Virus record (IMG/VR): IMGVR_UViG_3300035180_001778
Coordinates: 1 to 64,000 of that record
Reading direction: 5' to 3' (one strand)
Length of the DNA stretch: 64,000 bases
Each line of letters starts with the position of its first letter. The first letter of the stretch is position 1. This document shows, piece after piece, positions 17,471-30,428 of the stretch. Both the position numbers and the translations under genes were made by a program. The notes below the pieces were generated by a model. That model had not been told where the DNA came from. It searched no databases and worked only from the letters and a program-made list of their open reading frames with translations.

Positions 17471-17665
17471 ATGCACCCCATCTCCCACATCTACAGACTT
17501 GGGGCTACAGGTTCCGCTGGGGCAGCAACGTGTATGCGAAGCTGCCAGGTCGAGCGCAAACTTGACCCTGCTTCTGGGGGTTTCCTCTACAGGATCAATC
17601 GCGGGCCCTGGCAGAAACAAGCCCCTTCCTGCATCCCTCGACGCAGGTTTTGGCGGCCCGTCTAG
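17471..17665 (+). CDS. Small hypothetical protein
   Basis: GGTGTA at 17455, 10 nt before ATG. Confidence 0.5.
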   Translation: MHPISHIYRLGATGSAGAATCMRSCQVERKLDPASGGFLYRINRGPWQKQAPSCIPRRRFWRPV

Positions 17666-18786
17666 TTCCTCATCTGCCACTCGGCCAGAAGCGCCTTCCG
17701 GGTCATGGGTCCGATGATCCCGTCGACCTTGAGCCCGTGGACCCCCTGGAAAGCGAACAGGGCATCCGTGGTCTTGATCCCGATCCGCCCATCAGCTCCC
17801 GCCGGTCCGAGGTCATAGCCCTCTGCGATCAGCTCCGTCTGAACCTCTTTCGGGGTCAGGAAAGGAGGCATCGAGTCTGTAGGGTCGATCCCCAGCTTCG
17901 CGCTCCAAGCCCGGAGATCCGCTGCGAAGTCGGGCAGGTCCACACCGTAGATCCGCTCGATGAGCGGCCGGATCCCGTTGTAGCGAACCGGGTAGATTGT
18001 GATCTGCGGCCCAAACGTGAGCTGCTTCAAGATGTCGATGCACCAGTCCGAGGACCACTTCGGAGCCTTCGACTTCGCGACGGCGATCTTGAGCTGGTTG
18101 CTTGCGACGGTGGGGAGATTGGCGGCAAAGGAAAGGTAGGCCGAACGGAGAGCCCCGATCCAGCCTGAAGACATGGAAGAAGCCTCCGTCGAGAGAGAAC
18201 CCCCCCATAGAATGGCGTGGGCTTCCGGCGTGACGAAGCCCATGAGCTTCGGGACCGTGAAGGCTACTTGGACCTTCTGCGCCTCGGGGAGTGCCAGGGT
18301 GTTTGCAATGGCTGCCGCCCAGCTCTTGGCATACTCCTTTGAGCCCTCGTCCCAAGTTCCCTTCAAGCCGTTCGAGCGGAGCAAGAAGAGCTGCTTCTGC
18401 TCATCGAGCCGGTCGACCTCACCTCGGAAGTCACGGAAGAAGAACCTCCAGCGGCCCTTGGCATTCTTCTCGAAGTTGATGCCGGCGTTGGAGAGCTGAG
18501 TCTGGAAAGGCTTCGGGAAGCCCCCTGCCTGGTCAACGATGGCCCCGAGCATATCGGAGACGCTGTACTGGCCCGCCTCGCCCCACTGAATGATCCCTGC
18601 TGTGCAGATCATCCGGTCGTAGAGGTTCATGGCATCGTAGCGTCCGCCTTCGGTCGCTGTGATCACCGCCATGACCTTGTCCATGCTCGACGGGTCGGCC
18701 GGAAGGGTATAGGGAACGGACCCTCGAAAGAAGGGTCCCTCGTAGCCCTTGTAGGATCCCCACCCGATGTCTTCGATCTTCGCCAT
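17662..18786 (-). CDS. Putative endolysin: lysozyme-like N-terminal domain plus PG_binding_1 domain
   Basis: C-terminal ADGRIG..T..AL..FQ..HGL.VDGIIGP.T; N-terminal TEGG.YDAMNLYD...AGIIQW. Confidence 0.75.
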   Translation of the reverse strand: MAKIEDIGWGSYKGYEGPFFRGSVPYTLPADPSSMDKVMAVITATEGGRYDAMNLYDRMICTAGIIQWGEAGQYSVSDMLGAIVDQAGGFPKPFQTQLSNAGINFEKNAKGRWRFFFRDFRGEVDRLDEQKQLFLLRSNGLKGTWDEGSKEYAKSWAAAIANTLALPEAQKVQVAFTVPKLMGFVTPEAHAILWGGSLSTEASSMSSGWIGALRSAYLSFAANLPTVASNQLKIAVAKSKAPKWSSDWCIDILKQLTFGPQITIYPVRYNGIRPLIERIYGVDLPDFAADLRAWSAKLGIDPTDSMPPFLTPKEVQTELIAEGYDLGPAGADGRIGIKTTDALFAFQGVHGLKVDGIIGPMTRKALLAEWQMRN

Positions 18787-18822
18787 GTTGAGCCTCCACA
18801 TCGAGAGGCTCAACAAGAAGAA

Positions 18823-19107
18823 TCAAGGAGATTCGGGCTTCGGTCCCTGAGCGGCGATCAGGAGTTGCAGGTTCTCAGCTCCGAAATCGCGGTCATCTCC
18901 CCAACCCTCTGCGGTCTGCTTTTCCACGACGGCGATCTTCTTGGACAAGCACTGTGCGTCACACAGGTGGATCAGAGCAAGATGCTCCTCGGACCCCTCC
19001 GCCATTTTGACCGTGAGGAAGGGTCGGATCTGTCGAGTCCCGCTGGTCAACATGGTCCGGCAAAAGTCACAGATCGTTGCGCCCCTGCCTCCGTTGAACT
19101 TGAACAT
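18823..19107 (-). CDS. Hypothetical Zn-binding protein
   Basis: CDFC and HLCDAQC. Confidence 0.6.
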   Translation of the reverse strand: MFKFNGGRGATICDFCRTMLTSGTRQIRPFLTVKMAEGSEEHLALIHLCDAQCLSKKIAVVEKQTAEGWGDDRDFGAENLQLLIAAQGPKPESP

Positions 19108-19115
19108 GGGACTCC

Positions 19116-19292
19116 CTACTTCCCTTCCACAGCCTTCCCCCGCACCCAGGTGAAGAGGTGGTCGAGGGTCGAGAAGGTGGCCGCCCCGAAGAGGAAGCAG
19201 GCGATGAGGTGATGATCCACTCCGCTTCCCCACAGGAGAAGGGCCACGAGGGTCATCACGAACAGGACGGGAGTGTTTCTTTGCAGATTCAT
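19116..19292 (-). CDS. Small two-TM membrane protein (holin-like position)
   Basis: Two hydrophobic segments and a basic tail; upstream of the lysin. Confidence 0.5.
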   Translation of the reverse strand: MNLQRNTPVLFVMTLVALLLWGSGVDHHLIACFLFGAATFSTLDHLFTWVRGKAVEGK

Positions 19293-19294
19293 GG

Positions 19295-20209
19295 TCACAC
19301 CTTGGGGGGCATCTCGAACTTGAAGTACTTCGGCGGGCCGATCACTCGTCGAAGTACCTCGTTGAATTTCTCGACGAGGTCCCATGCGTTGTTCGGCCGG
19401 AGGTGTTGCATGGGAGACAGGCACTCCCTCAAGAACCTCTGAATGGGCTCCGGTGTGGTATCCGGCATCGCGTTCGTGGTGACGTCCCCGCCTTGCAGGG
19501 CGACCATGCACTTGGCCAGCATGTAGATGTCCGTCGCCGCCGTCGGGATCTCCTTGGCGAGAATCTCGGGAGCGTAGAAGCTACGCCAAGGGGCGGACAT
19601 GGCCCGAACCTTGTTCCGCCGTGTGTTCGCGTTGGTGACGGCGTAAGACCAGTCGATCAGCTTGGCCCCGTGGTCGGCCGGATGGATCAGCAAGTGCGGA
19701 GGGAGGACCGCTCCGTGAAGGACGTTCTTCTCATGGACGTACCCGAGGCCTTCCAGCCCGCGCTTGAACATCCAGACCATGTTCTGGTACTCGATGCCCG
19801 CGGGGTAGGCCTTCAGGATGTCCGCGACGGAGACGTGCTCCCCAAGCCAGGGAAAGACGTTGATCCGTTTCCCCTCCCGTTCGTTGTGGAAGGAGTAGCT
19901 GAGCTTGGAAAGGTAGCGGAGGAACCCAGCGTTCGCCTCTTCTGCGGGGAAGAGGTGCCGGATGACGTCCGCCTCGTGCTCGACGAGGTCGTTGACGTCG
20001 ACCCCATGAGAGACCTTCAGGGCCGCAGGGCGGCCGTTGTAGGTGCCTCGGTAGATGTCGCAGAGGTCCCCTTCCGCAACCTTCATGTCGAAGGTGAAGA
20101 TTGCGGTGTCCCCCTCGAGGTTACCATCGTCATCCGCCATGAGCGCTTCCCACGCATTGGTGGCGTGACGTGGTCGCGTGGGGGGCAGAATAATCGTGAT
20201 GAGGTCCAT
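19295..20209 (-). CDS. Atypical Ser/Thr protein kinase-fold protein with N-terminal tag (TNAWEALMADDD)
   Basis: AALK, HEAD, LHGAVLPPHLLI, LIDWSYA, YAPE, TDIYMLA subdomains. Confidence 0.8.
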   Translation of the reverse strand: MDLITIILPPTRPRHATNAWEALMADDDGNLEGDTAIFTFDMKVAEGDLCDIYRGTYNGRPAALKVSHGVDVNDLVEHEADVIRHLFPAEEANAGFLRYLSKLSYSFHNEREGKRINVFPWLGEHVSVADILKAYPAGIEYQNMVWMFKRGLEGLGYVHEKNVLHGAVLPPHLLIHPADHGAKLIDWSYAVTNANTRRNKVRAMSAPWRSFYAPEILAKEIPTAATDIYMLAKCMVALQGGDVTTNAMPDTTPEPIQRFLRECLSPMQHLRPNNAWDLVEKFNEVLRRVIGPPKYFKFEMPPKV

Positions 20210-21552
20210 TATCGCTTGTCCTTGGCCGTGGGGCCGAACGACTTGATGGTGATCGGCGTCTTCAGGAGGTCTTCGATCGTGGGGATGAACATTCCCCAGT
20301 TGACCTTCTCTTCCAAGTACACCGGACACGCCTGAGAGAGATTCAAAGAGATTTTCTCTCGGTCGTCAAAACGCCCCCGGATATCGGACACCCAAGACAC
20401 ATCCCTCAACTCCGATGCAACACCCAGGCCCCCCAGGTAGTCCACACATATCCTGTGCGGTTCATTCGTCCGCAGACACGCCACATCGCAGTGCGTCATG
20501 GCGATCTCGTCGACACCCCCAATAACCCTCAGAGCGTATTGGGTGGCAAACGCGTCGAAGGCCCCCAACCTGAAATCCTGTTGCCAGGAGTTGAGCGCGT
20601 TGTGCTCGACCTTCGGGGTCGGGAGAAAGACGCCCTTGCCTTCCGTGACGAACGGACCCGCCCCGTGCCGGGTCATGTAGGACCGGAGGATACCGATCTT
20701 CCTGATGTCCCCCGAGAAGCCTTCGATCAGGTTGAGGGCGTTGCCGAATGTCGTGTCGGACCAGGTCGTGTAGGGGTGGAACCCGTAGTCTTGGTCGAGC
20801 AGGACACCCTGAGCGCCCTCGAAGATCGTGGTCCCTTCTTTCATGATGCGCTGGAGATAGGCTGAACCGACAACCTGGAGCGGGAGCTGGCGGAAACCAT
20901 TCAGCAAATCCCTGATCACAGGGTGAAGGCTGTTGCTCAACAGCATGTTCCACTCTGCCTTGAAAGAGCAGATGCAGTCGAGGTCCCTGGACTTGCACTC
21001 GGGGCTGTGGAGATGAGACAGCTCTGTGAGGTAGCGATCCCGGACCTTCGTCAACTGGATCCCAACCTTAGCCCGGTCTTCCAGGTCTCCGACTTGAAGG
21101 TCGTGATCCGGGAAGCTCAAGTGACTGCTCACCGTCTCGCCGATCCCCATTCCACAGGAGCCGTGGCGGTTCGAGCGGGCCATCTCCCGGATGCGGTTCG
21201 CCGTCACATGGTAGGGCGTTGTGACCAGAGCTTCTCTCTCGATGGTCAGCCGCTCGAAGGCGTCGAGGACACCCACAGAACGGAGGTGCTTCTCCTCGGA
21301 GAGCATGAAGATCGGGTTCACGAGCATGTGCCGGCTGAGGTGCGTCTTCACTCCGGGCACGAAGGTGGCGCTCCCGAACTGAGCGAAGGTGTGATGCCGA
21401 CCATCCTCCAGGACCACGTTGTGACCAGCCTGTGCTCCTCCGTTAAATCGGCACACTACCTTTGCGTTGTGTTTTCGGGCCAAATAATCAACGATGGTTC
21501 CTTTACCTTCGTCACCATAATTCAACCCAAGAACAATCAACGCTTCAGACAT
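20209..21552 (-). CDS. Adenylosuccinate synthetase (PurA)-fold ligase, divergent
   Basis: GLNYGDEGKG, GGAQAGHNV, FEGAQGVLLD...HPYTTWSDT. Confidence 0.85.
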   Translation of the reverse strand: MSEALIVLGLNYGDEGKGTIVDYLARKHNAKVVCRFNGGAQAGHNVVLEDGRHHTFAQFGSATFVPGVKTHLSRHMLVNPIFMLSEEKHLRSVGVLDAFERLTIEREALVTTPYHVTANRIREMARSNRHGSCGMGIGETVSSHLSFPDHDLQVGDLEDRAKVGIQLTKVRDRYLTELSHLHSPECKSRDLDCICSFKAEWNMLLSNSLHPVIRDLLNGFRQLPLQVVGSAYLQRIMKEGTTIFEGAQGVLLDQDYGFHPYTTWSDTTFGNALNLIEGFSGDIRKIGILRSYMTRHGAGPFVTEGKGVFLPTPKVEHNALNSWQQDFRLGAFDAFATQYALRVIGGVDEIAMTHCDVACLRTNEPHRICVDYLGGLGVASELRDVSWVSDIRGRFDDREKISLNLSQACPVYLEEKVNWGMFIPTIEDLLKTPITIKSFGPTAKDKR

Positions 21553-22114
21553 GACTAACCTCGAAATGCTTGAGATATATACTCTTCACGTGCTCTAGGA
21601 ACGCTTCGAGTGAAAGAGACCTCTTGGCGTAGTTGCAAATTGCGCAACATGTGACGACGTTATCAGTCGTGTACCCAAGGGAGTTGTTCTTCCGATCGAT
21701 ACCGTTGTATGTGATGGAACTACCAGTCTTTCGGACCCCTTTGGGGATGCGCCGGCAAACACTTTTGGGGGGAGCGCCGCAGTAGTAGCACGCACACTTG
21801 ATGAGCGTCTGGAAGGCGGCAGCCGACAAGTCCCAGGAATGGCCCCTTCGAGTGGCGTGTCTCTGGTAATTCTTCGACAGAGCTGCAAGTGCTGAAGCTT
21901 CTCTATCCTGACGAGGCTTGGACCCATGAGGCAAACACCCACAACTTTTGGTGTTCCCTTTCTTCAAGGATTCTGCAAACCCCGTCCAATCGTTCCCGCA
22001 CGCGCACTTCCCTCGGACGATTTGGCCCCTGTGCTTGTACCCGAGCTTGTGTGCCCCTCCCAGCGATTCGCACACAGTAATCAGTCCGAATGTTTGTCCG
22101 AGCAAGTCTTCCAT
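21545..22114 (-). mobile_element. Free-standing HNH homing endonuclease gene
   Basis: GQTFGLITV, CACG, SCGC, CYYCG, YNGIDRKNNSLGYT..NVV.CCAICNYAK; visibly lower GC. Confidence 0.8.
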
Positions 22115-22169
22115 GAGGGTGCGGTGTAAGAGAGGATCGATAACCCTTTCGTACTACCGCACCCGACGG

Positions 22170-22538
22170 TCAGTCCGCCTGGTAGTACATGCTGATGTTG
22201 TCCCAGCCCGCGTTGACGAGGTGGTCACAGAGAGCTTCCGCGGCCTTCGTTCGCGAGTAGGCCTGCCCGCCACAGCCGGGACCGAAGACGAAGCGACGGT
22301 TCTTGTGATTACCGAACGAGTCTCCCGTCCAGTAGCCGGGAACCCCTGCTTCCGTGGCGGCCTTCTCGAACTCCGCCCGCACCTTGGGGGACGGAGAACG
22401 GCTGAAGTGGAACTTGGGGGCGTCGAAGTTACAGGTGCCGCCATCGTGGGTGGCCGCCGCAACCTGCTTGGCCACGATGAGGCCATCCTTGAGGTCCGCA
22501 GTGAGCTTGGTGAAGTCGTACGTGGTCTTGGTGGGCAT
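22170..22538 (-). CDS. Hypothetical protein
   Basis: Class I promoter at canonical spacing. Confidence 0.8.
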   Translation of the reverse strand: MPTKTTYDFTKLTADLKDGLIVAKQVAAATHDGGTCNFDAPKFHFSRSPSPKVRAEFEKAATEAGVPGYWTGDSFGNHKNRRFVFGPGCGGQAYSRTKAAEALCDHLVNAGWDNISMYYQAD

Positions 22539-22545
22539 GGTAGTC

Positions 22546-22573
22546 CTACAGCCGGGGCGGGTTTCGGATCAAC
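22546..22573 (-). promoter_or_regulatory. Class I promoter-like motif
   Basis: N16; N7 to ATG 22538. Confidence 0.8.
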
Positions 22574-22928
22574 CTCGGCGGGGGTAAAACTTCTCTTCGG
22601 CGGTACGAACGCAATCCCAGGCGAGATCCCATTCCGCTTTGGCGTCCACCGCGGGCTGGCCCGTCTTCGTGGGCTTCAGGGCTCGTTCGAAGAGCACTCG
22701 GGCCATCGCCGCGATGTCTTCGGTCGTGGCCACACCCTCGCCACGGTGCGTCGAGCTGGCCGGGAGGTGGTGATCCGAACGTGAGTAGTCGTCGCAGCGT
22801 TCGGGATGCGGTACCCCATCAGCATCTCGGGGGCAGTACACGCAAGTACCCCAGTGCCCGTTGCGAGCGACCAGGATTTCACGGTAGGAGGTTCTGAGAG
22901 CAAGAGCACGATCGATGGTATTCAGCAT
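22569..22928 (-). CDS. Hypothetical protein with CxxC
   Basis: ORF 1 nt after the upstream stop. Confidence 0.65.
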   Translation of the reverse strand: MLNTIDRALALRTSYREILVARNGHWGTCVYCPRDADGVPHPERCDDYSRSDHHLPASSTHRGEGVATTEDIAAMARVLFERALKPTKTGQPAVDAKAEWDLAWDCVRTAEEKFYPRRG

Positions 22929-22929
22929 T

Positions 22930-23163
22930 TCAGTTCTCCACGGAATCAAGGCCGTTTACCCAGGACCACAGCTCATTCCGCCCCATGAGCATGTATCCGT
23001 GAGTCTTCAGGGCGCGCTTCTTTCCTTCGGGGATGATCCCGAAGAACATGATTCCTGCGAAACCCTTCTTCGGGTCGATCGTGAAGCCTTTGCCCGTTTC
23101 GGGCACTCGGACTTTCACCGGCTTGTTGGCGAATAGGGCGTCAACCATTTCTTCAGGAGTCAT
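22930..23163 (-). CDS. Hypothetical protein
   Basis: Class I promoter at canonical spacing. Confidence 0.75.
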   Translation of the reverse strand: MTPEEMVDALFANKPVKVRVPETGKGFTIDPKKGFAGIMFFGIIPEGKKRALKTHGYMLMGRNELWSWVNGLDSVEN

Positions 23164-23170
23164 GATCAGC

Positions 23171-23198
23171 CTACAGTCCGAGGGAGCCGCCGATCAAC
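23171..23198 (-). promoter_or_regulatory. Class I promoter-like motif
   Basis: N16; N7 to ATG 23163. Confidence 0.8.
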
Positions 23199-23200
23199 CT

Positions 23201-23473
23201 CTACATGCTCGGTCCGTTGCCTCGCGGGGCGAACGTCCGAGCATCAGCAACCGTCCCCGGGGTGATGGGTGCATCACTCGGTTCTCCGTTGACCATTCGC
23301 CATTCGCGAATCGGCGTCGTGGGGTCAGAGAACAGGACGAAGCGAGCCACCCGCCTCTCCTCCTTGGAGTCATGTACCCACTGCTCCGCCTGTTACATGT
23401 ATTCCAGGTTGCGAGCGACCCCAATCAGGGTGCCGCCTTCGTCTGTCGTGTCGTCGTGGATTTCGAGGTTCAC
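23201..23473 (-). pseudogene. Hypothetical ORF interrupted by in-frame TAA (23393-23395)
   Basis: MNLEIHDD...NLEYM*QAEQWVHDSKEERR... continues in frame to TAG at 23201. Confidence 0.55.
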
Positions 23474-23675
23474 AGGTGCCTCACGAGCTGGTTGCGGAAG
23501 TTGTTGGTGTTGTCCGCCAAGGTGTTCACCATCACCTTGCAAAGGATGCCCGGAAACTCGTGCTCCGGGATGTGCCCTTCGTCCCGCAGACGGGCGAACA
23601 GGTCGTCAATGGAAGCACCCCCGCCGATCAAGCCGGCGAGGGTGTTCATGAGCTGGGGGAGAGTTCGATGGGCAT
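23470..23675 (-). CDS. Hypothetical protein; promoter-linked ATG out of frame by one base
   Basis: One extra base in the G5 run at 23655-23659 gives MPIELSPQLMNTLAG... Confidence 0.55.
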
Positions 23676-23683
23676 GGGGATCT

Positions 23684-23711
23684 ATACAAGGCGGGGAGCC
23701 TTTGGATCAAC
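23684..23711 (-). promoter_or_regulatory. Class I promoter-like motif (TGTAT)
   Basis: N16; N8 to ATG 23675. Confidence 0.7.
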
Positions 23712-23726
23712 CCATGCCCTGGGGGT

Positions 23727-24244
23727 TCACCGCGGGTCGTGAGCGTACCGGCGGAGCGCATCCGTGTGGAGCGGGAAGCCCAGCTCCGCATCCCAGAGGG
23801 CGATGGCCACCTCGGATACCTCGCGGTTCGGCTTGAACGCCTTCTGGACGTCTTCCCAGAGAACGATAGGTCCTCCGCAGAAGATGATCAGGCTCGACCC
23901 CGAGGGAGTCGTCTTGACTTCGAGGAGACGGTACTCCGAGGCGGGGGTCACGATCCCCACTTCTTCCTCGATCTCCCGAGCTGCCGCTTGCTCGAAGGAT
24001 TCTCCGAAGTCGACGTAGCCGCCGGGGAGAGCGAGGGTCCCCTTGGCCGGTTCGATGTTGCGCCGGATGACGAGGGCTCCCATCAGGGTTTTGTGCTTAC
24101 TGACGGGGACGATGGCCACCACGACCGGGGCTGGATTGCGGTAGGTGCTGCATTCGCAGGTTGCACACTTCCAGGGCCACAACTTCAGTGCCTCGGAGGA
24201 GTAGTGCTGCCCGCAGAAGTGACAGAAAAGATGGGGGTAGGCAT
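23727..24244 (-). CDS. Nudix hydrolase with N-terminal zinc ribbon (YjhB-like)
   Basis: CHFC..CATC; Nudix box GGYVDFGESFEQAAAREIEEEVG; the ATG at 24244 needs +1 base in G5 at 24233-24237. Confidence 0.85.
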
Positions 24245-24251
24245 GGCGGAA

Positions 24252-24278
24252 GTACAAGAGACGCCCCCGAGGATCAAC
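24252..24278 (-). promoter_or_regulatory. Class I promoter-like motif (TGTAC, N15)
   Basis: Spacer contains a C5 run; N7 to ATG 24244. Confidence 0.65.
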
Positions 24279-24298
24279 CCCAGGGGCGTCTCTTGTTG

Positions 24299-25258
24299 CT
24301 AGAGCCGGATGGTCGAGCTGGTGCTGGCCTTGCCGAGGCTTTCGGCGAGGGGCGTCAGGCTGGCGACGGTGTCGTTGATCAGCTTGCCCGAGACACCCGC
24401 CGTCGCGAGGCCCTGGCGAGCCCGGTCGAGATCGGTCGTCCCTTCGCAGAGCCCCACGGTGAGGGCGATCGTCTCGGCCACGCCCTCGGCGGAGGCCAGA
24501 GCGAGGACGTGGGTCTCGTCGAAGAGCTTGACCCAGTAGTTGCGGATCCTGGAGTCACGCCCGCCGGACGTCTCGGCCGGGATGATGAAGAAGACGTTGT
24601 ACTTCTCCTGGGCTTCCGCGATGATCTGCTCCAGGGGGATGTCCTCCTGGAGCGTCTCGCCGAAGAGCGCCTCGACTTCACGCTTGCTCACCCTCAGGTA
24701 GGCCTCCTCATCGCCGAGGAGGAAGAGGTAGCCCTTCTTGTTGCGCTTCTCGACGCAGTCGATCTGCGTGTGCCGGGCGAAGAAGTAGAGCGCGTTCTGG
24801 TAGCTCTCCTGCTTCGTGCCCCCGCCGCCCGCTTCGAGCCAGACGTTGCTGAAGGTCTCGTCCATCTCGTTGCCCGACTCGAACTCGCCGATCTGGATCG
24901 AGCCCTTGTCGCTGCGGGCATCACCGACGCATCCGAAGAGGAGCTGAGGATGCTGGACGCCGTTCTCCGTGAGGAGGTTCATCAGCCGCGGGAGCTTCTC
25001 CTGAAAGCTCTTCGGGGTCGTCGACATCGAGCCCGTCACGTCGAACATCACGGCCACGGCGAGCGACTCGGGATGAGCCGCCGAGTCGCGGGACTCGCGG
25101 ATGAGCTTGTTCTTGGGGTCGAGCAGAGCGTGCGTCCGCTGCTCGGAACGCGGCTTTGACACGACGGCCGCCGAATAGGCGAACGTCGTGGTTGCCGTGC
25201 GGACACGATCCGCCTTGCGCGCATTGTAGAAGTCTTCGCTGTAGCTGGAACCGCCCAT
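24299..25258 (-). CDS. vWA-domain protein
   Basis: MIDAS-like DVTGSM; GGGG..QESY; FLLGDE. Confidence 0.8.
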   Translation of the reverse strand: MGGSSYSEDFYNARKADRVRTATTTFAYSAAVVSKPRSEQRTHALLDPKNKLIRESRDSAAHPESLAVAVMFDVTGSMSTTPKSFQEKLPRLMNLLTENGVQHPQLLFGCVGDARSDKGSIQIGEFESGNEMDETFSNVWLEAGGGGTKQESYQNALYFFARHTQIDCVEKRNKKGYLFLLGDEEAYLRVSKREVEALFGETLQEDIPLEQIIAEAQEKYNVFFIIPAETSGGRDSRIRNYWVKLFDETHVLALASAEGVAETIALTVGLCEGTTDLDRARQGLATAGVSGKLINDTVASLTPLAESLGKASTSSTIRL

Positions 25259-25333
25259 GGGGGACTCTCTTTCTTCGTCTCAGGTGAGAAGGTGTTGGGG
25301 TCACTCGCACTATGCGGCAACCCCAACATCGCT

Positions 25334-25513
25334 TCAGGGGGTCGCCGGGGTCTCGCCGGTCGGGGTCGTGGTGGGAGCCGGGGTCGTGACCGGGGGCTCT
25401 TCCTTGGTTTCCGGGACCGTCGGAGCGACCACCGCCGGGGTCGCCGGGACGGTCTCGCTCACAGCCTTCTTGGCACTGTCGCTGAACTCTTCGCTGTAGA
25501 CGCTGCTGCCCAT
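25334..25513 (-). CDS. Pro/Thr-rich mini-protein sharing its N-terminus with the vWA gene
   Basis: MGSSVYSEEF vs MGGSSYSEDF, with near-identical leaders. Confidence 0.5.
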   Translation of the reverse strand: MGSSVYSEEFSDSAKKAVSETVPATPAVVAPTVPETKEEPPVTTPAPTTTPTGETPATP

Positions 25514-25523
25514 GGGGGGCCTC

Positions 25524-25603
25524 TTTTCTTCTTGGGGGTCGACTTCGGTAGATGAGAGATACACCAGATACCCTTCATCTACCGAAGTTTTCTTCTTGGG
25601 GTC
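25524..25603. repeat. Direct repeat / inverted repeat cassette enclosing a GGTGTA motif
   Basis: TTTTCTTCTTGGGG(G)TC direct repeats flank the 14-bp IR ACTTCGGTAGATGA / TCATCTACCGAAGT. Confidence 0.85.
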
Positions 25604-26987
25604 AGAAGATGTGACGTTCCGAGATTTTCCGGATCTCGGCGAGGGTCGGCTGAACCAGGATCTTCCCGTTCTCGAAGACCGGGATGAGGGCGCTGTTCCG
25701 GCGCAAGCCCTGGACGGTCTTGTACTCGCCGTTCTCGTGTATGAGGTCGAGGAGCCCTGCCTTCGAGCGCTTGCCCTTGTCGGTGACGGGGTCCTTGAAG
25801 ACATCCCGGGGCTCGCCGTCGACCACGATGTTCGAGCACTTGTAGGCGAAGCGCTGGGTGTCGCGATTGACACCCTGAAGCAGAGCGCCACCCATGCCGA
25901 ATCCGATGTTCGAGGCGCTGTAGCCGTTGGCCATCATCACGTTGAGGATCTCGCGAATCGACTCCTCGTTCACGCCGTCGCCCTGGATCAGGCGGATGTA
26001 CTTCGGAAGGACCTTGAAGCCCTTGGTGTTGGTCGTCATCCCGACCTTGCGCTCCAAGATATGGAGACACTTGAGGATGACCTCCGAAGGATTGCCCGAG
26101 TCCGGCCGGATCACGAGGGTCGCGCCCGACTCCTTGATCTCCTCGCGGAGGGTGTCACCCCAGATGTTCTCGACCGTGTTGTAGAGGTCGTAGGAGTCGC
26201 TGACGCAGGCGAACATCTTGCCCGGCTTCGCGAACTGGTGAACCATGTTGCGGTAGGCGTCGATCTCGTTCGACTTGCCCCAGCTCGTGATCGTCGAGTG
26301 CTCCGACGCGGGGATCGAGAAGCCCGCCATCTTGTCCTTGTAGTAGAAGTTGGCGAAGCGGATGCCCTCGATGGTGTCCGAGCCGAGGAAGTTGACCAGG
26401 TGGCTCATGCCGCCGATGCCGGCCGATTCCCGCGAGCTGACGCCCCGGCTGCCGAAGTCGTGGAGCTTGAATCCGATCTCGCCGACCGGGTCATCCGAGG
26501 ACTTCACGAGGGCCTCGAAGATGATCTTCTTGATGAAGAACGACTGGGTGGCGACGGTGATCGGATACCAGAGGCGCACGAGCTGGTTCTCGATCCACGA
26601 GCCGACCCACGGAGCCTCGGAATCCGTCGACTCGACGGTCATGAGCACGTTGTGCGTCGGGACGAGCGTGCCTTCCGGAACCGCGTTGATCTTCACCGGG
26701 TAGAAGCCGCCCTTGGCCACCAGACGGTCCCAGGCGGCCTTGGGGAAGGGCTCACCATGGAGAGCGGCGAAGTCGGCCGCTTCGTTGACGTGGGCCTGCG
26801 TGAAGCCCTTGCTGAGGTACTCCTGGCACAGGTAGCTGAGGCCGAAGAACAGGGTCGAGCCGTAGCGGCCACCGCGCGACTCGAAGTAGTTGAACATGCG
26901 CGTCATGCCCGGCGGATATTGCAGCTCGGGGTGCGAGAGCTTGTAGCTGTCGGTGTCGAGGATCGGGTTCGTTTCGTACGTGGTCAT
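25602..26987 (-). CDS. nadV: Nicotinamide phosphoribosyltransferase
   Basis: TDSYKLSH, HDFGSRG, ASEHS, VSDSYD, IRPDSG, IQGDG, FGMGGALLQ..NRDT. Confidence 0.92.
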   Translation of the reverse strand: MTTYETNPILDTDSYKLSHPELQYPPGMTRMFNYFESRGGRYGSTLFFGLSYLCQEYLSKGFTQAHVNEAADFAALHGEPFPKAAWDRLVAKGGFYPVKINAVPEGTLVPTHNVLMTVESTDSEAPWVGSWIENQLVRLWYPITVATQSFFIKKIIFEALVKSSDDPVGEIGFKLHDFGSRGVSSRESAGIGGMSHLVNFLGSDTIEGIRFANFYYKDKMAGFSIPASEHSTITSWGKSNEIDAYRNMVHQFAKPGKMFACVSDSYDLYNTVENIWGDTLREEIKESGATLVIRPDSGNPSEVILKCLHILERKVGMTTNTKGFKVLPKYIRLIQGDGVNEESIREILNVMMANGYSASNIGFGMGGALLQGVNRDTQRFAYKCSNIVVDGEPRDVFKDPVTDKGKRSKAGLLDLIHENGEYKTVQGLRRNSALIPVFENGKILVQPTLAEIRKISERHIF

Positions 26988-26998
26988 GGGGGTCTCCA

Positions 26999-27715
26999 TC
27001 AAATCTCGAAGTTGAAACCTTCACGAACAGCTCGCTCGTAAGCAACGCTGTCGAATCTGTAGAGGGTTGCTCGTCGGTGCGGAACACCAACCTGGACACC
27101 CGCCTCTTTGAGGATGCCCATTGCCAGGATGCGCTTGCGGAAGTTCCGCTTGTCGAGCGTCCGATTGAGGATCAGCTCGTAGAGCGATTGCAGCTCCGTC
27201 AGAGAGAACTTCGGCGGAAGAAGGTTGAACCCGATGGGGGCATATCGAACCTTCGCCTGGAGCCTTGCCCAAGCATCCTTGAGAATCTTGTCGTGATCGA
27301 AAGCCTTGTACATCTGGAGGGCTTTCTCGATCGGCCACCACTTGGCCTCTGCCGCATCATCACCACCCTTGACCGGATGGTCTTCCAGGCGGACCAGAGC
27401 GTAGTAGGCGACCGAGATCACCCGGCCTCGCGGGTCTCTCCCGGGGGTTCCGTAGGTGCCGAGCTGCTCCAGAAAGCCCACTTGAGCCCCCGTCTCCTCG
27501 CTCAGCTCACGTTGCGCCGCTTCGTCCAGGGACTCGCCCTGATTCCCGGTATCCGAGGTCTCGACGAACCCGCCCGGAAGAGCCCACAACCCCTGAAAGG
27601 GATCGGAGCCACGGCGGATCAGGAGAACGTGCATCTCCTTGAGATGGTCTGCGACGCCGAAGACAACGCAGTCGACCGTGACGGACGGTCGGGGATATTC
27701 GTACGTGTGACTCAT
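26999..27715 (-). CDS. nrtR: NrtR-family Nudix-related transcriptional regulator
   Basis: TVDCVVF...WALPGGF Nudix domain plus wHTH: [11 protein letters not shown]...[10 protein letters not shown]...ATLYRF. Confidence 0.88.
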
Positions 27716-27756
27716 GGTGTTTCTTCTACACCAACCATGGTGTGCTTTTCACACAA
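27715..27756. promoter_or_regulatory. Two tandem NrtR-operator-like palindromes overlapping the nrtR start and promoter
   Basis: TGGTGT-N7-ACACCA (27715-27733) and TGGTGT-N7-ACACAA (27738-27756). Confidence 0.65.
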
Positions 27757-27799
27757 ATCAACAGGCTGGCGGACGATTGTTGCTAACCCCTCGGAATCC

Positions 27800-27964
27800 C
27801 TAGCGGTTTTTCAGCTTCGGGGTGGGGTTCTTGCGGATCCACTGCGCGACGGCCTTGCACAGGCCGTCGTGAGACTTCGTCCCGAGCGGAATCTTGAGGG
27901 CTCGGGCAAGCCTGACGACGTTCGCGGGGTCCGCGTTGAAGAGGTCGTTGTAGTCGATCGTCAT
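27800..27964 (-). CDS. Small hypothetical protein
   Basis: MTIDYNDLFNADP...; class I promoter variant upstream. Confidence 0.6.
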   Translation of the reverse strand: MTIDYNDLFNADPANVVRLARALKIPLGTKSHDGLCKAVAQWIRKNPTPKLKNR

Positions 27965-27975
27965 GGCGGGGAGCA

Positions 27976-28003
27976 ATACAGCTCGACCCTTCCGCGGATC
28001 AAC
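27976..28003 (-). promoter_or_regulatory. Class I promoter-like motif (TGTAT)
   Basis: N16; N11 to ATG 27964. Confidence 0.7.
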
Positions 28004-28509
28004 TACCAGAGACCTTTCGAGCGGAGAATTTCGGAGGTGTGTTCGATGCCCACATCGTAGGCACGGTAGAACGCATCAGCGTCCTCTTCAGACATCCTGG
28101 AGAGGGTCCCAGAGGGGTCGCAGAACAGGACCCGGCTTTGGACGTCTTCCCCCGAGACAAACCAGAAGCAGTCAATGACGAAGCAATCCATCGTCCCGAT
28201 GAAGGATTGCGTACCCAGCTCTTGGAGCCTGGCAAGGTCGTGTCGTATCTCTTGTCAGTGCTTCGGAGGATAGATCAGACAGGGAAGGAGGCCTGAAATC
28301 TCTTTCTCATGAGAAAAAGCAGAAATCTCCCACCAGAGCTGTTCGATGGCAAACCGGAGACCCTCTATCGTTGTGCCGAGCACGAGATGGGGTTTAGGCT
28401 CCAAACGAAGCCCTCGAAAGCACGAGATGGGTTCGATCTTGCCCGAGGTCCGAGGAGGAGTTGGGGACGGTGGGTGCAAGAGGTCCCACATTTCGTCGAT
28501 CTCGGCCAT
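28003..28509 (-). pseudogene. Hypothetical ORF interrupted by in-frame TGA (28255-28257)
   Basis: ...IYPPKH*QEIRHDLARLQELGTQSFIGTMDCF... is one frame. Confidence 0.55.
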
Positions 28510-29708: not shown

Positions 29709-30428
29709 TCAGCCAAAGGCCAGAGATTCGGCTGCCTCCCTGGCGCATCTCGCCAGGTCATCGAGCGTCCCATCGTTGACGATGACGACGTCAAAGTTTT
29801 CGTTGGGGATCGACATCTGCTCGACCTCGCTCGCGTGAAGCCCCGTCGCCCCCTTCAGCCCAGCCCCGGGCCGCACGACCCGAATGAGCTTCCCGCCGGC
29901 TTCCTTGATGGCGGTCATCTCGTTCTTGAATCGAACGTCGGAAATGGCCACCCCTTGGCCAAAGGTCGGGATCTCCAGAGCCGTCACGAGGCTGTAGAAG
30001 CCTGTCATCTGGTTGTACCCCACCAGATTCGGCCCGAGTAGCTTCCTGGCGTTCTGGATCGCGAGGTTCACCCAGGTGTTGTCGAAACATGCTCGACCCC
30101 ATTCGGTGCCGAGCATCTGGAGAGCGAATCGAGGCGTGAGGTGGCAAGGACCGCCTTCCTCGAATCCGTCGAGTTTCCCAGGCATGCCGCAGCAAGCGCA
30201 CTTGCTGTCCGTCGTCCAGGGGCCGTGCTTGCGGAGGTATCGCGTGTCCGGCTTGTTGCGGCTTGCCGAGGGACCCCAGAGCTGGTCCTCCGTGAAGTCG
30301 AAGACCTCTCGGCAGATCCTCTTGAGAGGATCCGCTAGGGCGATGGGAACGAAGTTGAGGTTGCGGAGGAAATTGGCAACGGTGTCTTTGCCAGAGCCCG
30401 CAAGACCAGAGATTCCGAGTAGCTTCAT
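29709..30428 (-). CDS. Deoxynucleoside monophosphate kinase
   Basis: GISGLAGSGKDT, LADPLK, TPRFALQMLGTEWGR, ISDVRFKNE. Confidence 0.88.
   Translation of the reverse strand: MKLLGISGLAGSGKDTVANFLRNLNFVPIALADPLKRICREVFDFTEDQLWGPSASRNKPDTRYLRKHGPWTTDSKCACCGMPGKLDGFEEGGPCHLTPRFALQMLGTEWGRACFDNTWVNLAIQNARKLLGPNLVGYNQMTGFYSLVTALEIPTFGQGVAISDVRFKNEMTAIKEAGGKLIRVVRPGAGLKGATGLHASEVEQMSIPNENFDVVIVNDGTLDDLARCAREAAESLAFG

What the first reader, a model, noticed from the sequence alone, without database searches (positions are those of the whole stretch)
19295..27715. Co-oriented kinase / PurA-like / Nudix / vWA / NAMPT / NrtR block: candidate nucleotide-stress counter-defence system
SEEN: one minus-strand block holds an atypical protein kinase translationally coupled (TAATG) to a PurA-fold ligase, then a Zn-ribbon Nudix, a vWA protein, NAMPT and NrtR, with an HNH and small ORFs inserted. 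KNOWLEDGE: NAMPT is the first enzyme of nicotinamide salvage and, paired with an NMN adenylyltransferase, forms the phage NARP2 pathway that counters NAD-depleting defences. vWA/kinase pairs recur in stress-response neighbourhoods. INFERENCE: a larger module linking NAD repair to an unknown PurA-type nucleotide modification and phospho-signalling. No NMNAT or PRPP synthetase is visible in this window.
Basis: partly seen in the sequence, partly recalled or inferred. Interest (0 to 1): 0.68.

Follow-up and report, generated by a model that had tools for sequence, protein, structure and literature searches.

The report
NrtR-led NAD-salvage operon with PurA-like/vWA/kinase triad
A giant phage carries a regulator-led gene block that joins an NAD-rebuilding enzyme to a widespread but unstudied trio (a remodelled adenylosuccinate-synthetase look-alike, a vWA protein and a crippled kinase) that phages and a few bacteria keep together, often under the same ADP-ribose-type sensor, so it probably belongs to the fight over NAD, though its chemistry is unknown.

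Summary
Every gene named is on the minus strand at 19295-27715, including the TAATG overlap.

Related phage contigs carry the same genes as an uninterrupted operon: nrtR-NAMPT-vWA-PurA-like-kinase-(CinA/NadD-like NMNAT). The Zn-ribbon Nudix, the four small ORFs between it and the HNH, and the HNH are inserts of this lineage.

- **Conserved core:** the core is not kinase+PurA but vWA+PurA-like. The two are adjacent and co-oriented in 79 of 80 viral loci. A third gene sits beside them, either a mostly catalytically dead kinase or an unrelated ~200-aa protein.
- **Also in known phages and bacteria:** the trio occurs in Bxz1-type mycobacteriophages. It also occurs on bacterial chromosomes, where three actinobacteria have nrtR-kinase-vWA-PurA-like with no NAMPT.
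- **PurA-like enzyme:** it keeps the PurA catalytic residues (D13, K16, H41, Q224, T239). It has lost the L-aspartate pocket and R143. It is neither PurA nor PurZ.
- **NMNAT candidate:** a CinA/NadD-like gene exists in this genome about 32 kb from the block. No Prs/Adps or NadE gene was found.

My best reading is an NrtR-controlled, NARP2-like NAD salvage set coupled to a new purine-C6 ligase module. What that module does has not been shown.

The parts
27715..27756 (-). Two palindromes, TGGTGT-N7-ACACCA, 23 bp apart: 27715-27733 (12/12, overlapping the nrtR ATG) and 27738-27756 (11/12). Candidate NrtR operators at the operon start.
   Evidence: This is the only perfect site in the 350-kb record. 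GTGT-N7-ACAC-type repeats also lie upstream of nrtR in L097, L102 and L094. Sequence read. NrtR binding was not tested.
26999..27715 (-). NrtR-family regulator: a Nudix sensor domain with an intact REx2EE box, plus a winged-helix DNA-binding domain.
   Evidence: Pfam NUDIX 78.9 bits and NrtR_WHD 83.8 bits. NF050029 scores 176.9, below its cut-off of 400. Best PDB matches are AraR 5bs6 (7e-41) and Shewanella NrtR 3gz5 (2e-35).
25602..27002 (-). Nicotinamide phosphoribosyltransferase (NAMPT/NadV type), translationally coupled to nrtR through TGATG.
   Evidence: NF006629 596 bits, above its cut-off of 405. Pfam NAMPT_N and NAPRTase. phrog_448 1e-148.
25334..25513 (-). 59-aa ORF whose N-terminus (MGSSVYSEEF) repeats the conserved N-terminal motif of the vWA protein. 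Function unknown.
   Evidence: 84% identical in L004. It is also called as a gene in public assemblies.
24299..25258 (-). vWA-fold protein with a MIDAS-like site (D73-x-T75-G76-S77 invariant) and a conserved N-terminus M-G-x-x-x-[W/Y/F]. It is the obligate partner of the PurA-like gene.
   Evidence: phrog_2971 1e-50 and no Pfam hit. Alignment A1. AF2 pLDDT 90.1. Foldseek finds vWA folds. Adjacent to the PurA-like gene in 79 of 80 viral loci.
23727..24257 (-). Short Zn-ribbon Nudix hydrolase with NudC-like architecture. Substrate unknown. A lineage-specific insert.
   Evidence: NUDIX 50 bits. NAD(+) diphosphatase NF001299 scores 43, below its cut-off of 158. Aligns with NudC 5iw4/1vk6 over the ribbon and Nudix box. 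Found only in L003 and L004 among the loci.
22170..23649 (-). Four small ORFs of unknown function: 23470-23649 (59 aa), 22930-23163 (77 aa), 22569-22949 (126 aa) and 22170-22538 (122 aa). A lineage-specific insert between the vWA and PurA-like genes.
   Evidence: 75-88% identical at protein level in L004 and absent from other relatives. Only phrog_23592 (unknown function) matches the 122-aa ORF. No Pfam hit.
21545..22114 (-). Free-standing HNH/endonuclease VII-type homing endonuclease, inserted directly upstream of the PurA-like gene.
   Evidence: PHROG endonuclease VII 7e-13 and HNH 1e-9. Absent at this site in L004. Overlaps the PurA start by 8 nt.
20209..21552 (-). PurA-fold ligase paralogue. 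The catalytic core is kept, and the L-aspartate pocket and R143 are replaced. It is neither PurA nor PurZ.
   Evidence: Pfam 215.6 bits, but NCBIfam PurA scores 170 against a cut-off of 402 and PurZ scores 45 against 300. Residue mapping against E. coli PurA. Single copy in the genome.
19295..20209 (-). Atypical protein-kinase-fold protein with HRD changed to HGA. In this copy the VAIK Lys and the DFG Asp (as DWS) are kept. Coupled to the PurA-like gene through TAATG.
   Evidence: Pkinase 32.5 bits against a cut-off of 31.7. phrog_3043 3e-38. Family alignment. Junction sequence.

Best explanation
The block is one regulator-led operon of a ~363-kb jumbo phage from sediment and microbial-mat metagenomes. 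It combines two things.

**(1) An NAD+ salvage arm of the NARP2 kind.**
- NAMPT makes NMN from nicotinamide.
- A CinA/PncC-like plus NadD-like adenylyltransferase would complete the dinucleotide. It lies about 32 kb from the block here and directly downstream of the kinase in relatives.

**(2) A widespread, uncharacterised three-gene module.**
- A PurA paralogue keeps the machinery that phosphorylates a 6-oxopurine nucleotide with GTP, but it has a rebuilt amine-substrate pocket.
- Its obligate partner is a vWA/MIDAS protein.
- The third subunit is exchangeable: a pseudokinase-like protein here, a Met-rich ~200-aa protein in many other phages.

**Regulation (inferred).** The first gene encodes an NrtR-family Nudix-wHTH repressor. 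It probably binds the two palindromes at its own start and releases them when ADP-ribose or a related NDP-sugar accumulates, for example after NADase defences cleave NAD+.

**Chemistry of the module (inferred, not shown).** The PurA-like enzyme activates C6 of an IMP-like nucleotide and joins it to an amine other than L-aspartate. The vWA protein either completes the active site in place of the lost dimer contact (R143) or presents the amine or peptide. The module acts in the same NAD/ADPR stress response.

The Zn-ribbon Nudix, the HNH and the small ORFs are later inserts.
For: **Shown: gene identities and junctions**
- Gene identities. Junctions.

**Shown: conservation of the module**
- An uninterrupted nrtR-NAMPT-vWA-PurA-like-kinase-NMNAT-like operon in L097-99, and nrtR-vWA-PurA-like-kinase-x-NMNAT-like in L102.
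- vWA and PurA-like adjacent and co-oriented in 79 of 80 viral loci, median gap -14 nt. Upstream lies either a kinase-like gene (17 loci) or the X200 family (46 loci).
- The trio in Bxz1-type mycobacteriophage LRRHood as gp253/254/256.
- The trio in bacteria: Labilithrix has kinase-vWA-PurA-like, and three actinobacterial genomes have nrtR-kinase-vWA-PurA-like without NAMPT. Each of these genomes also has a separate purA match: 527-552 bits, above cut-off, in the three actinobacteria; split into two below-cut-off pieces of 300 and 179 bits in Labilithrix.

**Shown: PurA-like residues across 81 family members**
- Invariant: G12, D13, G15, K16, G17, H41, Q224, T239, G274.
- Changed: N38 to Q, V273 to H, T301 to Q, T300 to an aromatic residue, R303 deleted, R305 to a hydrophobic residue, R143 lost.

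**Shown: NAD arm**
- NMNAT-like gene: PF01467 above cut-off; 40% and 35% identity to the operon-linked genes of L102 and L097; AF2 pLDDT 92.9 with NadD and CinA as top folds.
- NAMPT-family gene in 18 of 50 cassette-bearing viral records. For comparison, NARP1 plus NARP2 occur in 5.4% of phages (preprint 10.1101/2024.02.11.579819).

**Shown: operator-like palindromes**
- In the phage loci and in the actinobacterial operons.
Against: - No biochemical or genetic data exist. I found no paper on this module.
- Two thirds of cassette-bearing phages have no NAMPT, so the trio does not need NAD salvage genes.
- The NrtR family also includes regulators with other effectors (AraR is the best PDB match), and the NrtR equivalog cut-off is not reached. 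ADPR sensing is therefore an assumption.
- In this genome the NMNAT-like gene is far from the block and on the other strand.
- Its CinA-like domain could route NMN to NaMN, which would need an NAD synthetase. None was found in the record.
- The complex prediction for PurA-like with vWA gave no verdict.
- Large phages collect nucleotide-metabolism genes in islands, so part of the NAMPT association may reflect genome size.
Confidence: 0.5

Rival explanations
1. The trio makes a modified purine nucleotide, an N6-substituted (deoxy)adenylate, for phage DNA or RNA hypermodification. This would resemble PurZ making the 2-aminoadenine precursor. The NAD genes would simply share a nucleotide-metabolism island.
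For: - PurA-type chemistry with a changed amine pocket.
- A dNMP kinase lies just upstream in the window (29709-30428) and in L097 and L102. Nucleoside deoxyribosyltransferase-like genes and an N6/N4 methyltransferase lie nearby in relatives.
- MetK, glycosyltransferases and Metallophos recur beside the cassette in other phages.
- A preprint notes adenylosuccinate-synthetase-coding operons predicted to make modified bases.
Against: - The bacterial nrtR-kinase-vWA-PurA-like operons have no polymerase, dNMP kinase or other DNA-modification genes.
- The protein is not PurZ (45 bits against a cut-off of 300), and no MazG/MazZ was found.
- A role for the vWA protein and a dead kinase is not obvious in a nucleotide-pool pathway.
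Confidence: 0.17
2. The trio is a self-contained conflict or signalling module: a vWA-kinase-type sensor with a nucleotide-transforming effector. It would be used by bacteria as inducible immunity and by phages for superinfection exclusion or host takeover, and would be unrelated to rebuilding NAD.
For: - Patchy and rare in bacteria: 3 of 401 sampled genomes of one phylum.
- Nudix-HTH regulators and vWA chaperones are noted in predicted ADPr-related conflict systems (PMC9503650).
- The kinase resembles defence kinases weakly: MkoA 9e-15, PD-T4-6, mad6.
Against: - No recognisable toxic effector such as a nuclease, NADase or pore.
- PurA-like and vWA match no PADLOC model.
- No PP2C partner as in TerY-P triads.
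- The module is very common in lytic phages.
- Most of the kinases lack catalytic residues.
Confidence: 0.15
3. The PurA-like gene is an ordinary auxiliary metabolic adenylosuccinate synthetase that boosts AMP synthesis during infection. The other genes are unrelated neighbours.
For: - Strong Pfam PurA match (215.6 bits) with an intact P-loop, D13, H41 and Q224.
- Deposited genomes annotate it as "PurA-like adenylosuccinate synthetase".
Against: - The aspartate-binding residues are replaced or deleted in all 81 family members: T300, T301, R303 and R305.
- It scores far below both PurA equivalog cut-offs.
- No PurB is present in the record to finish the pathway.
- It is always paired with vWA.
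- Bacteria with the operon keep a separate purA gene elsewhere in the genome.
Confidence: 0.05

Closest known systems
NARP2 (phage NAD+ reconstitution pathway 2: Nampt + Nmnat, e.g. Vibrio phage KVP40 NadV/NatV)
   Same: A bona fide NAMPT scoring above the equivalog cut-off, plus an NMN/NaMN adenylyltransferase-fold gene in the same phage genome. No Adps/Prs is present, as NARP1 would need. In relatives the two genes sit in one operon.
   Different: - The adenylyltransferase is a CinA/PncC-like plus NadD-like fusion. From my own recollection, the KVP40 enzyme is a NadM-type adenylyltransferase fused to a Nudix domain; no tool result here confirms this.
- In this genome it lies about 32 kb from the block.
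- The operon is headed by an NrtR-family regulator.
- It carries the vWA/PurA-like/kinase trio, which is not part of NARP2.
- Activity against NADase defences is untested.
Adenylosuccinate synthetase PurA (EC 6.3.4.4)
   Same: The same fold (Pfam PF00709), and the same P-loop GDEGKG, catalytic D13, K16, H41, Q224 and T239. In this copy the guanine-specificity D333 and S414 are also kept.
   Different: - T300, T301, R303 and R305 (the L-Asp site) are replaced or deleted.
- R143 and R131 are lost.
- N38 is Q and V273 is H in essentially all members.
- It scores below the NCBIfam cut-offs.
- It is always encoded beside a vWA protein.
- Host genomes keep a separate purA gene elsewhere.
PurZ (succino-2-amino-deoxyadenylate synthase of Z-genome phages)
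   Same: A phage-borne PurA-superfamily enzyme that uses PurA chemistry on a non-IMP substrate. PHROGs places both in phrog_1211.
   Different: - NCBIfam PurZ scores 45 bits against a cut-off of 300, and only over the N-terminal 134 residues.
- PDB PurZ chains match at E about 1e-4, against 1e-32 for PurA.
- The protein is about 447 aa, against about 365 aa for PurZ.
- No MazG/MazZ was found.
NrtR regulons of bacterial NAD metabolism (Rodionov et al. 2008, cited in PMC9503650)
   Same: A Nudix-wHTH regulator is encoded first in an operon that contains an NAD salvage gene. Palindromic sites overlap its own promoter and start region.
   Different: The Nudix box is catalytically intact. The effector is unknown. 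In bacteria the regulator heads an operon made only of kinase-vWA-PurA-like, genes not known to belong to NAD metabolism.
vWA-kinase stress modules (TerY-P triad) and vWA-MoxR pairs
   Same: A vWA/MIDAS protein is encoded next to a protein-kinase-fold gene and a P-loop NTPase-fold partner.
   Different: No PP2C phosphatase and no AAA+ MoxR are present. The NTPase-fold partner is a PurA paralogue, and the kinase is mostly catalytically dead.

Membership tests
PurA (adenylosuccinate synthetase) | PurA fold and family HMM | tested here: met
   PF00709 215.6 bits, covering 6-444. PDB PurA chains match at 1e-32.
PurA (adenylosuccinate synthetase) | Score above the curated equivalog cut-off | tested here: not met
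   NF002223 scores 170.2 against 402. TIGR00184 scores 149.4 against 395.6. The bacterial operon copies score 102-141 bits. The separate purA gene scores 527-552 in the three actinobacteria; in Labilithrix it matches as two pieces below cut-off.
PurA (adenylosuccinate synthetase) | Catalytic residues D13, K16, H41, Q224 and the P-loop | tested here: met
   Invariant in 81 of 81 family members.
PurA (adenylosuccinate synthetase) | L-aspartate site (T300, T301, R303, R305) and IMP 5'-phosphate contact R143 | tested here: not met
   The family motif is [Y/W/F]-Q-G-(deletion)-x-[L/I/F/M]-R. R143 is not conserved.
PurZ | PurZ HMM above cut-off | tested here: not met
   NF038379 scores 45.2 against 300, N-terminal part only.
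PurZ | Companion genes MazZ, DatZ and DpoZ | tested here: inconclusive
   No MazG-family gene in the 350-kb record. DatZ and DpoZ were not searched.
NARP2 | NAMPT | tested here: met
   NF006629 scores 595.9 against 405. Pfam NAMPT_N and NAPRTase.
NARP2 | NMN adenylyltransferase in the same phage | tested here: inconclusive
   A 388-aa ORF at record position 349133-350299. PF01467 scores 24.2 against 21. The HxGH motif is present as FHDGH. Top Foldseek matches are NadD and CinA. Homologues are auto-named NaMN adenylyltransferase or PncC. The preference for NMN or NaMN is unknown.
NARP2 | The two genes linked in one operon | tested here: not met
   They are about 32-37 kb apart and on opposite strands in this genome. 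They are linked in relatives L097 and L102.
NARP2 | Restores NAD+ and overcomes NADase defences | not testable with these tools
   Needs infection assays and metabolomics.
NARP1 | Adps (Prs-like) next to Namat | tested here: not met
   No PF13793 or PF14572 match in the record. Genes called in 9.9 kb of the 12.4-kb stretch missing from the record carry no Pfam hit.
NrtR | Nudix domain plus NrtR winged helix | tested here: met
   PF00293 78.9 bits and PF21906 83.8 bits. Shewanella NrtR 3gz5 matches at 2e-35.
NrtR | Equivalog score and ADPR as effector | tested here: inconclusive
   NF050029 scores 176.9 against 400. The best PDB match is the arabinose sensor AraR. The effector cannot be tested here.
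NrtR | Palindromic operator at the regulated promoter | tested here: inconclusive
   Two TGGTGT-N7-ACACCA sites at 27715-27756, unique in the genome. Comparable repeats occur in relatives and in the bacterial operons. Binding was not shown.
vWA / MIDAS | vWA fold with a DxSxS-type metal site | tested here: met
   AF2 pLDDT 90. Foldseek matches the integrin beta I-domain, Ku80 and SpaC vWA at E about 1e-5. D73-x-T75-G-S77 is invariant. No Pfam VWA model matches.
Eukaryotic-type protein kinase | Catalytic HRD Asp, VAIK Lys and DFG Asp | tested here: not met
   In the window HRD reads HGA, while the Lys and the DFG Asp (as DWS) are kept. Most family members lack all three. Pkinase scores 32.5 against 31.7.
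NudC (NAD(H) diphosphatase) | Zn ribbon, Nudix box and family score | tested here: inconclusive
   The ribbon and box align to NudC, but NF001299 scores 43 against 158. By eye I saw no SQPWPFPxS-type motif in the translation. That this motif marks NudC is from my memory.
TerY-P triad | vWA plus kinase plus PP2C phosphatase | tested here: not met
   No PP2C_2 match in the record, and none appears beside the cassette in any locus.

The most novel reading that the evidence does not exclude
The vWA/PurA-like/third-subunit trio is a new enzyme system. On an ADP-ribose-type signal it uses GTP (possibly another NTP in the D333N branch) to couple a 6-oxopurine nucleotide at C6 to a non-aspartate amine. 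That amine could be the near-invariant N-terminal glycine of the vWA protein itself, which would give a protein-linked or otherwise N6-substituted adenylate. Phages and bacteria would use it in the conflict over NAD+ and nucleotide pools.
Probability: 0.25. Interest if true: 0.9.

Novelty: new variant of a known kind. Interest (0 to 1): 0.72.

Why it matters
NAD+ depletion is one of the commonest bacterial anti-phage strategies, and only three phage NAD-rebuilding pathways are described.

- **A different layout.** This locus has an ADPR-type sensor at the head of the operon, NAMPT, and a CinA/NadD-type adenylyltransferase.
- **A new link.** It ties that pathway to a three-gene module that nobody appears to have studied.
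- **The module is widespread.** It occurs in at least 80 viral contigs (165 matching stretches), in about 200 Bxz1-type mycobacteriophage records, in Vibrio and Rhizobium phages, and in a few bacterial chromosomes.
- **Probable new chemistry.** The PurA paralogue has a conserved catalytic core and a rebuilt substrate pocket. This points to a reaction not yet on the books.
- **It can be tested.** Bxz1-type phages of Mycobacterium smegmatis are genetically tractable.

Tried and rejected
**Nucleotide and RNA searches**
- Megablast of the block against deposited phages: no match.
- Rfam scan of 18500-28500: nothing. No tRNAs in the window.
- Terminator and promoter scan: no convincing internal terminator, only weak hairpins at 23336-23355.

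**Protein-level tests**
- Complex prediction of PurA-like with vWA: \"no answer\", score 0.00. This is not evidence either way.
- PADLOC: no model matches PurA-like, vWA, NAMPT or X200. The kinase and the Nudix proteins give only generic matches.
- Pfam on the small ORFs and on conserved flanking ORFs of relatives: nothing.
- The 252-aa gene upstream of the Labilithrix operon is not NrtR-like.

**Genes not found in the record**
- PurB, Prs/Adps, NadE, MazG and PP2C.

**Searches that could not be completed**
- I looked for model coordinates, to measure how far the vWA N-terminus lies from the MIDAS site. None are exposed.
- RNA evidence: no RNA runs hold the locus, only four sediment or mat DNA runs.

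**Literature**
- Ten full-text searches found only genome announcements and annotation tables for this PurA-like/vWA pair.

**Rejected readings**
- Housekeeping PurA, PurZ, NARP1 and the TerY-P triad (see membership tests).

Full report
**Context.** The window is the first 64 kb of an IMG/VR virus record of 350,469 bp with about 60% G+C. Public assemblies of the same phage include a 362,830-bp contig and an 88-kb Logan contig. These show that the record lacks about 12.4 kb between its end and its start. The genome is therefore about 363 kb, which is jumbo-phage size. The DNA is held by sediment and microbial-mat metagenome runs, and no RNA run holds it.

| Gene | Coordinates |
|---|---|
| NrtR-family regulator | 27715-26999 |
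| NAMPT | 27002-25602 |
| 59-aa ORF | 25513-25334 |
| vWA protein | 25258-24299 |
| Zn-ribbon Nudix | 24257-23727 |
| Four small ORFs | 23649-22170 |
| HNH endonuclease | 22114-21545 |
| PurA-like protein | 21552-20209 |
| Kinase-fold protein | 20209-19295 |

Three junctions overlap: TAATG between PurA-like and kinase, TGATG between nrtR and NAMPT, and ATGTCTGA between HNH and PurA-like. The vWA assignment has no Pfam support. It is confirmed instead by a confident AlphaFold model (pLDDT 90.1) whose best PDB matches are vWA domains of integrin beta subunits, Ku80 and SpaC. It also carries an invariant D-x-T-G-S MIDAS-like motif.

**What is conserved.** A scan of viral contigs with the PurA-like protein returned 80 loci.
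- Clustering all their ORFs de novo shows the vWA gene next to the PurA-like gene on the same strand in 79 of 80 loci, with a median gap of -14 nt.
- Immediately upstream of vWA there is one of two genes. One is a kinase-fold gene (17 loci; profile-profile probability 100% to the window's kinase). The other belongs to an unrelated family that I call X200, with a ~130-aa beta-rich domain and a Met/Gly-rich tail (46 loci).
- In the window's lineage (L003, L004, L005) the kinase is downstream of PurA-like instead.
- The same trio is annotated in Bxz1-type mycobacteriophages. In LRRHood, gp253 is a serine/threonine kinase, gp254 is a hypothetical protein (the vWA homologue), and gp256 is a PurA-like adenylosuccinate synthetase. 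About 200 such records match, plus Vibrio and Rhizobium phages.

**Relatives closer to the window show its block uninterrupted.**
- L097-99 carry nrtR-NAMPT-vWA-PurA-like-kinase-379-aa gene.
- L102 carries nrtR-vWA-PurA-like-kinase-131 aa-369-aa gene-lysin.
- L094-96 carry nrtR-65 aa-kinase-vWA-PurA-like.

The Zn-ribbon Nudix, the four small ORFs between it and the HNH, and the HNH occur only in the window's closest relatives (L003, L004), and the HNH is missing from L004. They are therefore recent inserts that split vWA from PurA-like.

**Bacterial copies.** The vWA protein has many ~50%-identical homologues, some on bacterial chromosomes.
- Labilithrix luteola has kinase-vWA-PurA-like.
- Actinorugispora endophytica and two more actinobacterial genomes have nrtR-kinase-vWA-PurA-like with no NAMPT. 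These three were the only hits among 401 sampled genomes of that phylum.
- The surroundings are not phage-like.
- Each of these four genomes also has a separate purA match elsewhere. In the three actinobacteria it scores 527-552 bits, above the TIGR00184 cut-off. In Labilithrix it appears as two pieces of 300 and 179 bits, both below cut-off. The operon copies score only 102-141 bits.

An NrtR-family regulator is thus tied to the trio itself, independently of NAMPT. This is the strongest evidence that the trio belongs to an NAD/ADP-ribose-related response.

**The PurA-like enzyme.** I mapped it on E. coli PurA using literature numbering, checked against the PDB chain alignment. Across 81 family members:
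- **Catalytic core invariant:** G12, D13, G15, K16, G17, H41, Q224, T239 and G274.
- **Family-specific changes, equally invariant:** N38 to Q (80 of 81), V273 to H (81 of 81), T301 to Q (81 of 81), T300 to Y/W/F, R303 deleted (81 of 81), R305 to L/I/F/M. R143 and R131 are not conserved.

From established knowledge of PurA, T300/T301/R303/R305 bind L-aspartate, and R143 reaches across the dimer to the IMP 5'-phosphate. The enzyme therefore very probably still phosphorylates a 6-oxopurine nucleotide but does not use L-aspartate as PurA does.

D333, the guanine-specificity residue, is D in the window and in all kinase-type cassettes. It is N in 30 of 46 X200-type cassettes, which suggests a different NTP there.

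The protein is not PurZ. NF038379 scores 45 against a cut-off of 300, PurZ chains match at only about 1e-4, and the record has no MazG. The record also has no PurB.

**The kinase.** The window's copy keeps the VAIK-type Lys and the DFG-type Asp (as DWS), but HRD reads HGA. Most family members lack all three catalytic residues. It is best regarded as a pseudokinase-like scaffold. This fits its replacement by the unrelated X200 protein at the same position.

**The NAD arm.**
- NAMPT is a clear NadV-type enzyme, scoring 596 bits against a cut-off of 405.
- The record holds one nucleotidyltransferase candidate, a 388-aa ORF at 349133-350299.
- That ORF is 40% and 35% identical (E 2e-83 and 2e-61) to the genes that follow the kinase in L102 and L097.
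- Its homologues carry PF01467, and one carries PF02464. They are auto-named NaMN adenylyltransferase or PncC.
- Its model (pLDDT 92.9) matches NadD structures with one domain and CinA/PncC structures with the other.
- In this genome it lies about 37 kb from the vWA gene, which is about 32 kb beyond the kinase end of the block, on the other strand.
- No Prs/Adps gene and no NadE gene was found.

The set therefore resembles NARP2 (preprint 10.1101/2024.02.11.579819), not NARP1 or NARP3 (PMC13464706). It differs in having a different type of adenylyltransferase and a regulator.

Among 50 cassette-bearing viral records, 18 carry a NAMPT-family gene. Among those at least 90% complete, 7 of 21 do. 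This is well above the 5.4% of phages reported to have NARP1 or NARP2, though genome size confounds the comparison. It also shows that most cassette-bearing phages lack NAMPT.

**Regulation.** Two palindromes, TGGTGT-N7-ACACCA, lie 23 bp apart right at the nrtR start (27715-27733 and 27738-27756). The first is the only perfect match in 350 kb. Similar GTGT-N7-ACAC repeats precede nrtR in L097, L102 and L094. The three actinobacterial operons share a different palindrome, TCTCAG-N15-17-CTGAGA, at -37 to -46.

The regulator's Nudix box is intact, as read from the translation. Its best solved relatives are AraR and Shewanella NrtR, so the effector is not certain. ADP-ribose is the family's classical ligand, but this is established knowledge rather than something tested here.

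**How it most likely works.**
- *Shown:* the gene content, the conserved architecture, the residue pattern and the folds.
- *Inferred:* the regulator holds the operon off until an ADPR-type ligand accumulates. NAMPT and the NadD-like enzyme then rebuild a pyridine dinucleotide. The trio performs a GTP-dependent C6 ligation on an IMP-like nucleotide with a non-aspartate amine. The vWA protein either completes the active site, since the dimer contact R143 is lost, or presents the amine.

The vWA N-terminus M-G-x-x-x-[W/Y/F] is strikingly conserved. It is repeated in the small ORF at 25334-25513. This is why the N-terminal glycine is a candidate nucleophile, but that idea is speculation.

I give 0.5 to the overall reading and about 0.25 to the specific new-chemistry reading. 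The rivals are listed with their tests: a base-hypermodification pathway, an autonomous conflict module, and an ordinary PurA acting as an auxiliary metabolic gene.

**Novelty.** I found no study of this trio in ten full-text searches. The hits were only annotation lists and one remark that some predicted base-modification operons encode adenylosuccinate synthetase. PADLOC and Pfam have no model for the vWA partner or the pair.

I file the block as a new variant of a known kind: phage NAD+ reconstitution, here regulator-led and with another adenylyltransferase. The embedded trio may turn out to be categorically new.

Noticed in passing
window 25334-25513 (-): A 59-aa ORF starts MGSSVYSEEF. This copies the conserved N-terminal motif of the vWA protein (MGGSSYSEDF; family motif M-G-x-x-x-[W/Y/F]). 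The rest is a Pro/Thr-rich tail. It is conserved in L004.
   Followed up: partly
window 21545-22114 (-): A free-standing HNH/endonuclease VII-like gene overlaps the PurA-like start by 8 nt. It is absent at this site in the 70%-identical relative L004. PurA-like is also the most diverged gene of the block between the two phages (70%, against 84-95% for most of its neighbours).
   Followed up: partly
L018:8521-9126, L012:8368-9081 and 44 other viral loci: The 'X200' family is a ~130-aa beta-rich domain followed by a Met/Gly-rich, acidic-ended tail. It replaces the kinase upstream of vWA and matches no Pfam, PHROG or PADLOC model. Cassettes with X200 are the only ones in which PurA residue D333 is N.
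   Followed up: partly
kinase family alignment (e.g. L009:6008-7042, L083:5558-6688): Most kinase-like members start with a conserved W-H-P-D motif followed by a helix. This is reminiscent of the HPD loop of J-domains, but it lacks the preceding helices. The window's copy has lost this N-terminal part.
   Followed up: no
G000 record 349133-350299 (outside the window; L002:841-2007): A CinA/PncC-like plus NadD-like fusion protein. In the Logan variant of this phage (L105:1097-1660) an ADP-ribosylglycohydrolase-family gene lies about 0.7 kb upstream of it.
   Followed up: partly
L009, L013, L014, L016, L017, L060 (flanks of the cassette): In one group of phages the cassette sits among RNA-repair-like genes: an ATP-dependent ligase, a calcineurin-like phosphoesterase and an RlaP-like nucleotidyltransferase. 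LRRHood has a polynucleotide kinase nearby.
   Followed up: no
window 29709-30428 (-) and 17662-18816 (-): The block is flanked by a dNMP kinase (DNMK, 52.6 bits) upstream and a lysin with a PG_binding_1 domain downstream. The same flanks occur in relatives L097 and L102, so the whole region is syntenic in this phage group.
   Followed up: partly
L092 (G319 chromosome): In one actinobacterial genome the housekeeping purA lies only about 9.5 kb from the nrtR-kinase-vWA-PurA-like operon.
   Followed up: no
whole record: CheckV rates the record 73% complete. A 362,830-bp assembly of the same phage exceeds it by only about 12.4 kb and bridges its two ends. The record is therefore probably about 97% of a circular or circularly permuted genome.
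   Followed up: partly
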